From Antechinus flavipes (Eukaryota): 64,000 nucleotides of DNA. Location: the NCBI RefSeq assembly GCF_016432865.1, contig NC_067404.1, positions 84,878,001 to 84,942,000 of the forward strand. The letters are read 5' to 3'. The position numbers and the translations under genes were made by a program. The notes under the pieces were generated by a model, which did no database searches, was not told the origin of the DNA, and was given only the letters and a program-made list of their open reading frames with translations. Shown piece after piece: positions 19,692 to 20,827 of this stretch (the stretch's first letter is position 1; each line of letters starts with the position of its first letter).

Positions 19692-20827
19692 TCAAGCCAT
19701 CTTCAACTGATGGAGGAGTTTCTGCTTCTCCTGTCGTAGGGTTTGAATCCGGCCTCTTTTCCACTTGATTTGGTTCTGAAGCTCAGTAATCTCCTCAACC
19801 ATCAGCAGAGTTGGACAGTACAGAACAGGGGGGCGGGGAAAAAGAAAGAAAGATGGGTTACAGGCAAGCAGCATTTCCTGATACCTGCCCCCAACACATC
19901 CTCCCTGGAAATAAAACCGAGCAAAGAAATCTTTGGGGAGCAAATGGGAAATTCTATGATTTGCTCTCACCCTACCTTGGAGGGAGGTAAGTGGCCCGGG
20001 CAAAGGCCCGTTGGGTTTCTAACAAATGGGCAATCCCTTAAGTTTGGGAGCACCCTAAGGGTGGCTCACCTTTCTGGAAGGTTCCCTGGGCCTGCCGCAG
20101 ACTGCGGAGCACCAAGATGCCAAACCAGTTCAGGGGATCCTGCTGAGGAGTTGGCTCTGTGTAAGGCGGTGGGCTGGGCAGCAGAGGAGAGACCTCGTGC
20201 TGCGGCTGCTCGTGAGGCACTGGGGGAAACAAGGCCTCCTCACAGTCCATCACGACATGGGCCTCCTGGGGTCTGGAGTCCTTCAGGGCCTCGGGTTTAG
20301 TGTAAATCACCTGGAACTGGGGCTGACCGGACTCGGGCTCACTGAGGAAGGAAGTTCAGAGTGGGATCAAGACCCACACTGATGCCTCCTGTGCCCTTTC
20401 CCTCCGAGGGCGCCCAGACTTTCTCAGCTTACCTAGTGCAGACACTGAAGAGGGGAGTCATAGAGGAGCCATATTGAAGGGGGCTGACAGCATTGGTACC
20501 ATGGTGTAGCGAGACTTAGAAAGGGAGAACCAGCCTTTTAGGGGGCCGGGAGCAGGGTTAAGGCCAAGGCCCGGGGACAGAATTAAGGCCAAGGGGCAGA
20601 GGAGGGAGAAGACGCGGACTGCCCCTTTCCTTCCCTCTTTCTCCCCACCCCCGCTTCGGGTTCCACTTCGAGGTGGACCCCACACCTCCTCCACTAGGGC
20701 GTTCAGTGTCGCCCTTTTTTCTTCCAGCTGCTCGAGCTCCTGGAGTATCTGCACGATGTACATATCGAGCTCGGTGCTCAGTGCCCGCAAAAATTCGGCA
20801 GCTCGAACTACCGGCGGTCGTCTCCAT
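19692..20827 (-). pseudogene. CCDC115: CCDC115 (Vma22-like V-ATPase assembly factor) with disabling lesions
   Basis: Segments 20827-20686, 20534-20433, 20341-20070 and 19810-19692 translate to LSTELDMYIVQILQELEQLEEKRATLNALVEE / GWFSLSKSRYTM-(G)TNAVSPLQYGSSMTP / QDPLNWFGILVLRSLRQAQGTFQK / LLMVEEITELQNQIKW, colinear with human CCDC115. Lesions: +1 nt in exon 1, exon 2 acceptor shifted by 1 nt, -1 nt in exon 2, last acceptor AA instead of AG. AATAAA (minus strand) at 19665-19670. Confidence 0.88.

What the first reader, a model, noticed from the sequence alone, without database searches (positions are those of the whole stretch)
19692..20827. CCDC115 carries four independent disabling lesions while its promoter partner IMP4 is intact
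Seen: (1) exon 1 from the Kozak ATG is 142 nt, one base too many at the T5 run near 20789-20793; (2) the exon 2 acceptor reads aaaag|GC instead of ag|GGC; (3) ATG-G[G]T lacks a G near 20499, causing a stop at 20458 before the conserved PLQY motif; (4) the last exon, colinear with human, is preceded by AA (19812-19811) instead of AG. IMP4 (873 nt) and MON1B (1692 nt) show no such errors, which argues against random base-calling noise. Known: CCDC115 (Vma22) is a V-ATPase assembly factor and its loss causes a congenital glycosylation disorder in humans. Inference: either a functional copy exists elsewhere, making this block a duplicate, or the gene was lost in this lineage.
Basis: partly seen in the sequence, partly recalled or inferred. 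Interest (0 to 1): 0.7.

Follow-up and report, generated by a model that had tools for sequence, protein, structure and literature searches.

The report
Dead X-linked parent of CCDC115 retrogene
The broken CCDC115 gene next to IMP4 on the yellow-footed antechinus X chromosome is really broken, but the animal has not lost the function: an old, intact, intron-free copy on chromosome 2 has taken over, a rare but already known kind of gene replacement.

Summary
All four disruptions are in the sequence. They are not assembly noise. Contigs built from whole-genome reads match the window letter for letter. A transcript contig from another sample carries the same letters, splices only intron 2 and retains introns 1 and 3, the two introns whose acceptor AG is mutated.

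- The exon 1 frameshift is not at the T5 run, which is a synonymous TTC>TTT change. It is a 14-nt deficit a few bases upstream.
- The exon 2 acceptor lesion is a G>A substitution that moves the AG by one base.

The genome is Antechinus flavipes and the window lies on its X chromosome (chr7). The same genome holds an intact, intronless 221-aa CCDC115 on chr2. That copy is orthologous by flanking DNA to intronless copies in devil, dunnart, koala and Dromiciops. It evolves at dN/dS about 0.3 and forms a CpG island, so it is an ancient functional retrogene.

The window copy is the original, intron-bearing gene paired with IMP4. It evolves nearly neutrally in dasyurids (dN/dS 0.56-0.75). It is broken independently in devil, has an open frame in dunnart, and has an intact annotated product in bilby.

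Verdict: a transcribed parental pseudogene replaced by a retrogene. The scan noted a similar case (GPKOW) 358 kb away on the same X. This is a new member of a known kind, of moderate interest.

The parts
19642..20966 (-). Parental (intron-bearing) CCDC115 locus, now a transcribed pseudogene. This is the span homologous to the retrocopy's mRNA-derived sequence, from 5' UTR to 3' UTR.
   Evidence: blastn of window against L002 gives four blocks that abut at the exon junctions. The exon 3 translation hits Pfam Vma22_CCDC115 at 26.6 bits, below the 28-bit cut-off.
20686..20827 (-). Exon 1, 142 nt from the ATG. The frame is lost by a 14-nt deficit versus devil (+4 versus dunnart) at about 20800/20799. 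The T5 run at 20793-20789 is a synonymous change, not the lesion.
20535..20685 (-). Intron 1 (151 nt). The acceptor G at 20536 is mutated to A, which shifts the AG by one base. The intron is retained in the RNA contig and is open in the conserved frame.
   Evidence: Organism C and dunnart read ctgaag|GGCTGG.
20433..20534 (-). Exon 2 (102 nt). One base is missing in ATGG(G)T at 20499/20500, giving a premature TGA at 20460-20458.
   Evidence: Organism C has one more base here.
20342..20432 (-). Intron 2 (91 nt, GT..AG), the only intron removed in the RNA contig.
   Evidence: table 5: joint 20341/20433 in run X3.
20070..20341 (-). Exon 3 (272 nt, open frame). It carries the conserved DPLNWFGILV motif, with Pro>Leu at 20108 in a position that is Pro in all 16 other sequences aligned there.
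   Evidence: Organism C keeps the Pro codon.
19811..20069 (-). Intron 3 (259 nt). The acceptor AG is mutated to AA (19812-19811). The intron is retained in the RNA contig and read through in public model X1.
   Evidence: Devil, dunnart and organism C have AG.
19692..19810 (-). Exon 4 (119 nt, open frame, stop at 19694-19692). A cryptic AG at 19792-19791 is used by public model X2, giving ...QKDY*. The AATAAA signal lies at 19670-19665.
20828..21272 (.). CpG-island bidirectional promoter shared with IMP4 (GC 0.65-0.72, CpG o/e 0.6-1.05). It probably explains why the dead gene is still transcribed.
   Evidence: The RNA contig starts at 20856.
21273..23110 (+). IMP4, intact: a 290-aa Brix-domain product in the public annotation.
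   Evidence: L009 coordinates mapped to the window. Weak Brix hit on one exon ORF.

Best explanation
The window holds the original, intron-containing CCDC115 (Vma22) gene of Antechinus flavipes. It sits head to head with IMP4 near the end of the X chromosome.

Before the Australidelphian marsupials diverged, a CCDC115 mRNA was reverse-transcribed and inserted on an autosome, chr2 in dasyurids. That intronless copy brought its 5' UTR and CpG-rich body with it. It stayed intact under purifying selection and now supplies the V-ATPase assembly factor (inferred).

The X-linked parent became dispensable. It evolved almost neutrally in dasyurids and was then disabled independently in different lineages. 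In the antechinus lineage it collected:
- a 14-nt frameshifting deficit in exon 1;
- two acceptor-site substitutions, at introns 1 and 3;
- a 1-nt deletion in exon 2.

It is still transcribed, because its promoter is the bidirectional CpG island that the essential IMP4 gene needs (inferred). The transcript keeps introns 1 and 3 and cannot encode a full-length protein.

Shown: the lesions in DNA reads and RNA, the mis-splicing, the intact retrocopy, its orthology across orders and its constraint. Inferred: that the retrocopy is expressed and does the job, and that sharing the promoter with IMP4 is why transcription persists.
For: Lesions are real.
- The whole-genome contig of X1 is identical to the window.
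- The RNA contig of X3 is identical, splices only intron 2 (GT..AG) and retains introns 1 and 3.
- X2 holds all the sampled words. X4 holds the same 0.84 share as X3.
- Public models for this locus are truncated to 110 and 102 aa.

Lesions are derived.
- Organism C (about 4% substitutions) has the intact state at sites 2, 3 and 4, and Pro at 20108.
- Dunnart has the intact state at all four sites. Devil has an in-frame exon 1, the extra base at site 3 and AG at both acceptors.

A second copy exists.
- P0016 is 221 aa, and its gene range equals its CDS (666 nt), so it has no introns. It lies on the 686,337,178-bp chromosome.
- That chromosome is chr2. The window's 86,570,782-bp chromosome is the X (PMC9290055).

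It is a retrocopy. Homology to the parent falls in four blocks that abut at the exon junctions, running from the 5' UTR to the 3' UTR and followed by an A-rich stretch.

It is ancient and orthologous.
- Flanks are colinear between antechinus, koala and Dromiciops.
- Intronless copies also occur in devil, dunnart, possum, wallaby and Gracilinanus.

Constraint differs between the copies.
- Retrocopy dN/dS is 0.26-0.40, with an intact ORF in all five lineages checked by DNA. Its Pfam Vma22_CCDC115 score is 64 bits.
- It is a CpG island in CpG-free flanks in three orders.
- Parent dN/dS is 0.56-0.75, and its exon divergence equals intron divergence, about 0.10.
- The dasyurid X copies share a long stem branch in the tree.
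- The devil's parent copy has its own lesions: a 4-nt insertion in exon 3, a 6-nt deletion, and altered residues in the conserved WFGILVP motif.
Against:
- The dunnart X copy still has an open 210-aa frame that passes Pfam (52.8 bits). The parent may therefore keep some weak function in part of the family.
- Transcription of the antechinus copy leaves room for a non-coding or truncated-protein role.
- The protein tree does not resolve parent and retrocopy clades with support: the parent clade gets 59/77, and a retrocopy clade is merely not rejected (p-AU 0.36).
- The state of lesion 1 in organism C was not displayed (two indels were hidden).
Confidence: 0.85

Rival explanations
1. The lesions are assembly or base-calling errors in a long-read assembly, and the X-linked gene is in fact intact.
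For: Two of the four changes alter the length of short G runs. The assembly is PacBio-based.
Against: - The read-derived contig of a whole-genome run is identical to the window.
- An RNA contig from another sample is identical too, and it is mis-spliced at exactly the two mutated acceptors.
- The assembly was polished with 50x short reads.
- Lesion 1 is a 14-nt difference and lesions 2 and 4 are substitutions, which are not homopolymer slips.
Confidence: 0.02
2. CCDC115 function was lost outright in this lineage, so V-ATPase assembly proceeds without a Vma22 homologue.
For: The syntenic gene is disabled.
Against: The same genome has an intact 221-aa paralogue with a full Pfam Vma22_CCDC115 match. 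It is conserved across marsupial orders at dN/dS about 0.3.
Confidence: 0.01
3. The window block is a segmental duplicate of an intact IMP4-CCDC115 locus that lies elsewhere.
Against: - The same arrangement (short gene, IMP4, CCDC115 with introns) is found at one locus each in devil, dunnart and bilby.
- The only other CCDC115 protein of this species returned by the search is encoded without introns and has no IMP4 within 10 kb.
Confidence: 0.02
4. The X-linked copy is not dead but repurposed. It might make a truncated protein: the 102-110-aa models starting in exon 2, or the 110-codon ORF at 20458-20790 that begins at TTG, contains a newly gained in-frame ATG and runs through the open intron 1. 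Alternatively its RNA might be functional.
For: - The locus is transcribed, with a contig depth of about 21 in a small transcriptome.
- Exons 3 and 4 are still open.
- An in-frame ATG was gained at 20771-20769, and intron 1 has no stop in the conserved frame.
- The dunnart keeps a full ORF.
Against: - No product can contain both coiled-coil ends.
- dN/dS is 0.56-0.75 and exons diverge as fast as introns.
- A Pro that is conserved in every other sequence aligned there is replaced.
- The devil broke the gene in a different place.
- Transcription is expected anyway from the promoter shared with IMP4.
Confidence: 0.08

Closest known systems
Orphan retrogenes: parental gene replaced by its retrocopy (Ciomborowska et al. 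2013, PMC3548309; Carelli et al. 2016, PMC4772013)
   Same: Retroposition is followed by pseudogenisation of the intron-bearing parent. The retrocopy keeps an intact ORF under purifying selection and has a CpG-island promoter, as in nine of the ten orphan families described in PMC4772013.
   Different: - Here the parent is not gone. It is caught in different states in related species: an intact annotated product in bilby, an open frame under relaxed constraint in dunnart, and independent breaks in devil and antechinus.
- It is still transcribed.
- CCDC115 did not turn up together with 'retrogene' or 'marsupial' in the searchable literature. The supplements of PMC4772013 were not available.
Out-of-X retrogene export in therian mammals (Potrzebowski et al. 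2008, PMC2276528)
   Same: The parent is X-linked in dasyurids and the functional retrocopy is autosomal.
   Different: - Classical out-of-X retrogenes are testis-biased backups whose parents survive. Here the parent decays, which implies that the retrogene took over the whole function.
- I did not test whether the locus was already X-linked when the retrocopy arose.
GPKOW dead parent and autosomal retrogene on the same X
   Same: Same genome, 358 kb beyond the window. An X-linked parent has decayed, its promoter survives, and an intronless autosomal copy is used by marsupials.
   Different: GPKOW is reported as reduced to a broken first exon. CCDC115 keeps all four exons and is at a much earlier stage of decay. 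I did not re-test that note.
Vma22p / CCDC115 V-ATPase assembly factor (Pfam PF21730)
   Same: The window exons are colinear with vertebrate CCDC115. The conserved PLQY and DPLxWFGILV motifs are recognisable.
   Different: - The window copy cannot encode the family's full domain.
- Its best piece scores 26.6 bits against a 28-bit cut-off.
- The chr2 retrocopy is the family member that scores above the cut-off.

Membership tests
Vma22/CCDC115 (PF21730), window copy | Profile match above Pfam's gathering score over the whole domain | tested here: not met
   Exon 3 piece scores 26.6 bits and public model P0009 scores 26.7 bits, against a 28-bit cut-off. Only profile positions 111-142 are covered. 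Exons 1 and 4 alone give no hit.
Vma22/CCDC115 (PF21730), window copy | One uninterrupted reading frame across the four exons with canonical splice sites | tested here: not met
   Two frameshifts and two mutated acceptors. RNA retains introns 1 and 3.
Vma22/CCDC115 (PF21730), chr2 copy P0016 | Profile match above the gathering score, with an intact ORF | tested here: met
   64.2 bits over profile positions 1-142 of 143. A 666-nt ORF translates to the 221-aa protein.
Processed retrogene (chr2 copy) | All parental introns missing exactly at the exon junctions | tested here: met
   Four homology blocks abut at L002 10169, 10267-10274 and 10541-10550.
Processed retrogene (chr2 copy) | Homology confined to the mRNA (UTR to UTR), with a poly(A) remnant and target-site duplications | tested here: inconclusive
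   Homology runs from 139 nt upstream of the ATG to about 50 nt past the stop, then an A-rich stretch. I did not look for target-site duplications, and none are expected to survive at this age.
Processed retrogene (chr2 copy) | Purifying selection and conserved position across species, which make it a functional retrogene rather than a retropseudogene | tested here: met
   dN/dS is 0.26-0.40 and the ORF is intact in five species. Flanks are colinear in antechinus, devil, dunnart, koala and Dromiciops.
Processed retrogene (chr2 copy) | Transcription | not tested
   The reads tools were exhausted on the window locus. CpG-island maintenance is only indirect evidence.
Parental pseudogene of an orphan-type retrogene (window copy) | Ancestral synteny and intron structure retained | tested here: met
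   The copy sits head to head with IMP4 (Brix) in antechinus, devil, dunnart and bilby. It has three introns, at the exon junctions defined by the retrocopy homology blocks.
Parental pseudogene of an orphan-type retrogene (window copy) | Disabling mutations verified in independent data | tested here: met
   A whole-genome contig and an RNA contig are both identical to the window.
Parental pseudogene of an orphan-type retrogene (window copy) | Relaxed constraint | tested here: met
   dN/dS is 0.56-0.75. Exon K is 0.10-0.14 against intron K of 0.10-0.11. Lineage-specific nonsynonymous:synonymous counts are 10:5, 23:8 and 24:12.

The most novel reading that the evidence does not exclude
A parent/retrogene pair has coexisted for tens of millions of years and is being resolved differently, and repeatedly, across marsupials.
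- Bilby has an intact annotated product at the intron-bearing parental locus, and no second bilby CCDC115 protein was returned by the search.
- In diprotodonts and Dromiciops only the retrogene is annotated.
- Within one family (Dasyuridae) the parent dies independently in separate lineages, while the dunnart still has an open frame.

Together with the neighbouring GPKOW case, this would point to a systematic replacement of X-linked housekeeping genes by autosomal retrogenes in marsupials. It would also give a dated series for how a gene dies when its promoter is kept alive by an essential neighbour.
Probability: 0.3. Interest if true: 0.55.

Novelty: new member of a known kind. Interest (0 to 1): 0.38.

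Why it matters
- **No biological paradox.** It is not without it.
- **Annotation.** The gene that public annotation calls 'CCDC115-like' on chr2 is the working CCDC115 of dasyurids and of most Australidelphians checked. The IMP4-linked 'CCDC115-like' models of 102, 110 and 178 aa are products of pseudogenes.
- **A gene death caught midway.** All exons are still present. The mutated acceptors can be linked directly to intron retention in RNA. The promoter is kept active by a neighbour. Breaks are independent in sister lineages. That makes it a clean example of the orphan-retrogene process, of which PMC4772013 describes only ten families across mammals.

Tried and rejected
- **Homopolymer assembly error.** This was my first guess, at about 50%. 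I rejected it after laying the read-derived and RNA-derived contigs and aligning the relatives.
- **Extra T in the T5 run as lesion 1.** Rejected: devil and dunnart read TTCTTG in frame, and the length difference lies upstream.
- **Compensation between lesions.** The exon 1 and exon 2 acceptor frameshifts cancel arithmetically (-14 and -1). The N-terminal coiled coil would still be read out of frame, and lesion 3 still stops the frame. I did not pursue it.
- **Organism B.** The run of the closest relative gave no laid contig, so I could not test whether the lesions are shared within Antechinus.
- **Missing DNA.** For these only gene ranges and neighbours could be used.
- **Protein tree.** It is too short to resolve when the duplication happened. 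Flank colinearity was used instead.
- **Literature.** Searches for CCDC115 with 'retrogene' or 'marsupial' found nothing. Supplements of PMC4772013 are not held.
- **Joined model.** I made no joined or frame-corrected spliced model of the window copy, and searched none. Exons were handled singly by reference, or as columns of the genomic alignment.

Full report
**1. What is in the window.**
On the minus strand there is a four-exon CCDC115 gene whose exons are colinear with vertebrate CCDC115.

| Feature | Coordinates | Length |
|---|---|---|
| Exon 1 | 20827-20686 | 142 nt from the ATG |
| Intron 1 | 20685-20535 | 151 nt |
| Exon 2 | 20534-20433 | 102 nt |
| Intron 2 | 20432-20342 | 91 nt |
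| Exon 3 | 20341-20070 | 272 nt |
| Intron 3 | 20069-19811 | 259 nt |
| Exon 4 | 19810-19692 | 119 nt |

- The conserved N-terminal helix (…LRALSTELDMYIVQILQELEQLEEKRATLNALVEE) is in the +1 frame relative to the ATG.
- Exon 2 starts one base late.
- Exon 2 changes frame at ATGGT (20502-20498) and reaches a TGA at 20460-20458.
- Exon 4 is preceded by AA instead of AG.
- Exons 3 and 4 are open.

**2. Are they real?**
The runs search found two whole-genome runs of 'organism A' that hold all the sampled 31-letter words. It also found two small transcriptome-sized runs that each hold 84% of the words. Laying four runs gave three results.

- The read-derived contig of X1 matches the window over 19600-20900 with no difference.
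- X3 has a single 1408-nt contig that starts at 20856 and carries the same letters.
  - It skips exactly 20342-20432, which is intron 2 with GT..AG ends.
  - It runs straight through introns 1 and 3.
  - The two retained introns are the two whose acceptor is mutated.
- The 0.84 word share of both RNA-sized runs is what this isoform predicts. Without introns 1 and 3 the share would be near 0.5.

The published assembly is PacBio polished with 50x short reads (PMC9290055). Assembly error is excluded.

**3. Whose genome, and how it is annotated.**
The exon 3 translation hits a 102-aa protein at 100% identity. That protein and a 110-aa sibling are 'CCDC115-like isoform X2/X1' of Antechinus flavipes.

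- Both models start at a Met inside exon 2.
- X1 reads through into intron 3 (…QKGEPPLGCSQT*).
- X2 uses a cryptic AG inside exon 4 (19792-19791) and stops after …QKDY*.
- The locus lies at 84.89 Mb of the 86,570,782-bp chromosome. The genome paper identifies that chromosome as chr7, the X.
- IMP4 next door is annotated as a 290-aa Brix protein, at window 21273-23110, 445 bp from the CCDC115 ATG.

**4. State of the four sites in relatives.**
Organism C is a whole-genome run with about 4% substitutions relative to the window. The devil (L001) and dunnart (L003) states come from the alignment.

| Site | Antechinus (window) | Organism C | Devil | Dunnart |
|---|---|---|---|---|
| Exon 1 length | 142 nt, out of frame | not displayed | 156 nt, in frame | 138 nt, in frame |
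| Intron 1 acceptor | ctaaaag, then GC | ctgaag, then GGCTGG | AG intact | ctgaag, then GGC |
| Exon 2 (ATGGT) | one base missing | one extra base, frame restored | has the extra base | ATGGGT |
| Intron 3 acceptor | AA | AG | AG | AG |

- The exon 1 gap lies at about 20800/20799.
- The T5 run is a synonymous TTC>TTT change at 20791, not the lesion.
- Organism C also has Pro instead of Leu at 20108.
- The lesions are therefore derived on the antechinus lineage.
- Two of them are substitutions and one is a 14-nt length change. They are not homopolymer slips.
- Two indels of organism C were not displayed, so its exon 1 state is unknown.

**5. The other copy.**
A search with the bilby protein returned a 221-aa 'CCDC115-like' protein of A. 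flavipes on the 686,337,178-bp chromosome. That chromosome is chr2.

- **No introns.** Its gene range is 666 nt and translates directly to the protein.
- **Processed retrocopy.** Against the window it aligns in four blocks that abut at the exon junctions. The homology runs from 139 nt upstream of the ATG to about 50 nt beyond the stop, followed by an A-rich stretch.
- **Other intronless genes.**
  - By DNA: devil, dunnart, Dromiciops and koala.
  - By gene range equal to CDS: brushtail possum, tammar wallaby and Gracilinanus.
- **Same insertion site.** The 10-kb flanks of the antechinus, koala and Dromiciops copies are colinear by blastn. The insertion is therefore orthologous and predates the split of these Australidelphian orders. 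Orthology with the didelphid intronless copy was not testable.
- **Constraint.** Nei-Gojobori dN/dS among retrocopies is 0.26-0.40, with all ORFs intact. The protein matches Pfam Vma22_CCDC115 over the whole profile at 64 bits.
- **CpG island.** The retrocopy has GC 0.5-0.67 and CpG o/e 0.5-1.1. Its flanks have GC about 0.3 and almost no CpG. This holds in all three orders checked and is what a germline-unmethylated, active promoter-gene unit looks like.

**6. The parental locus across species.**
The arrangement 'short gene, IMP4, CCDC115 with introns' recurs in devil, dunnart and bilby.

- The bilby product (218 aa) is intact in the annotation.
- The dunnart product (210 aa) has an open frame and passes Pfam at 52.8 bits.
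- The devil model (178 aa) has a frameshifted tail. The cause is a 4-nt insertion in exon 3 that is not shared with antechinus. The devil also has a 6-nt deletion and altered residues in the WFGILVP motif.
- Among the three dasyurid X copies, dN/dS is 0.56-0.75 and exon divergence equals intron divergence.
- Lineage-specific nonsynonymous:synonymous counts are 10:5, 23:8 and 24:12.
- In the protein tree the X copies form a 100/100 clade on a long stem of 0.42. They sit with the bilby parent, with weak support (59/77). A single retrocopy clade is not rejected, p-AU 0.36.

**7. Mechanism and time course.**

- Shown: an ancient retroposition produced a constrained autosomal CCDC115.
- Shown: the X-linked parent lost most of its constraint in dasyurids.
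- Shown: the parent was disabled independently in the devil and antechinus lineages.
- Shown: in antechinus the two acceptor mutations coincide with retention of exactly those introns in RNA.
- Inferred: the retrogene supplies the V-ATPase assembly function.
- Inferred: the pseudogene is still transcribed because its promoter is the bidirectional CpG island that IMP4 needs (CpG o/e about 1 over 20801-21200).
- Four lesions are roughly what neutral decay predicts over the few percent of divergence since organism C. This is a rough estimate of my own, not a tool result.

**8. Comparison with what is known.**

- This is the 'orphan retrogene' route: retroposition followed by death of the parent. 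PMC3548309 and PMC4772013 describe it, and the latter found ten such families in mammals, nine of them with CpG-island promoters.
- The direction, X-linked parent to autosomal retrogene, also fits the out-of-X pattern (PMC2276528). I did not test whether the locus was X-linked when the copy arose.
- No searchable paper links CCDC115 with 'retrogene' or 'marsupial'.
- The scan already noted a similar case, GPKOW, 358 kb beyond this window on the same X. I did not re-test it.

**9. Limits.**

- Retrocopy expression was not shown.
- Several loci had no DNA available.
- Parental relics in diprotodonts and Dromiciops, and a retrocopy in bilby, could not be looked for. The length filter of the protein search also hides short models.

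Noticed in passing
L002:9801-10600 (also L008 and L006, same range): The chr2 retrocopy is a sharply bounded CpG island (GC 0.5-0.67, CpG o/e 0.5-1.1). Its flanks are AT-rich with almost no CpG. This holds in antechinus, koala and Dromiciops. The retrocopy seems to have carried or built its own promoter island, starting in the copied 5' UTR.
   Followed up: partly
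window 20458-20790 (-): In the antechinus X copy an in-frame ATG arose at 20771-20769, where devil has TTG and dunnart GTG. The retained intron 1 (151 nt) has no stop in the conserved frame. This gives a 110-codon ORF that begins at TTG, contains the new ATG and ends at the lesion-3 stop. It is probably chance in GC-rich sequence.
   Followed up: partly
window 20107-20109 (-): Pro>Leu in the GILVP motif, a position that is Pro in all 16 other sequences aligned there. Organism C still has Pro.
   Followed up: yes
window 24598-25339 (-): The public annotation calls a 146-aa product with no Pfam hit here. This is the stretch another first-stage note calls a PTPN18 tail. Gene models in the same position beside IMP4 exist in bilby (145 aa), devil (253 aa) and dunnart (267 aa), so the short form is not peculiar to antechinus.
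   Followed up: partly
window 37700-41300 (+): Exon-sized ORFs of a MON1-type gene cover the first, second and third longin domains without gaps in profile coverage. A long CA/TG microsatellite produces spurious His/Thr/Pro-rich ORFs at 38100-38650 inside an intron.
   Followed up: partly
L005 (GCA_048593225.1, CM109175.1:263002407-263023072) and L002 (CM028218.1:263002075-263022740): The devil-type retrocopy protein is found in a second assembly at almost the same chromosome coordinate as in the antechinus assembly (263.002 Mb in both). This may mean that the assembly was scaffolded on the antechinus reference.
   Followed up: no
P0020, P0022, P0024 (didelphids), alignment A1 columns 107-114: The Gracilinanus intronless copy, the Monodelphis protein and a second Gracilinanus fragment (142 aa, on a 5.9-kb contig) share an 8-residue deletion that is absent from all Australidelphian copies. 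This hints at gene conversion between the didelphid copies, or at an independent retroposition in didelphids.
   Followed up: no
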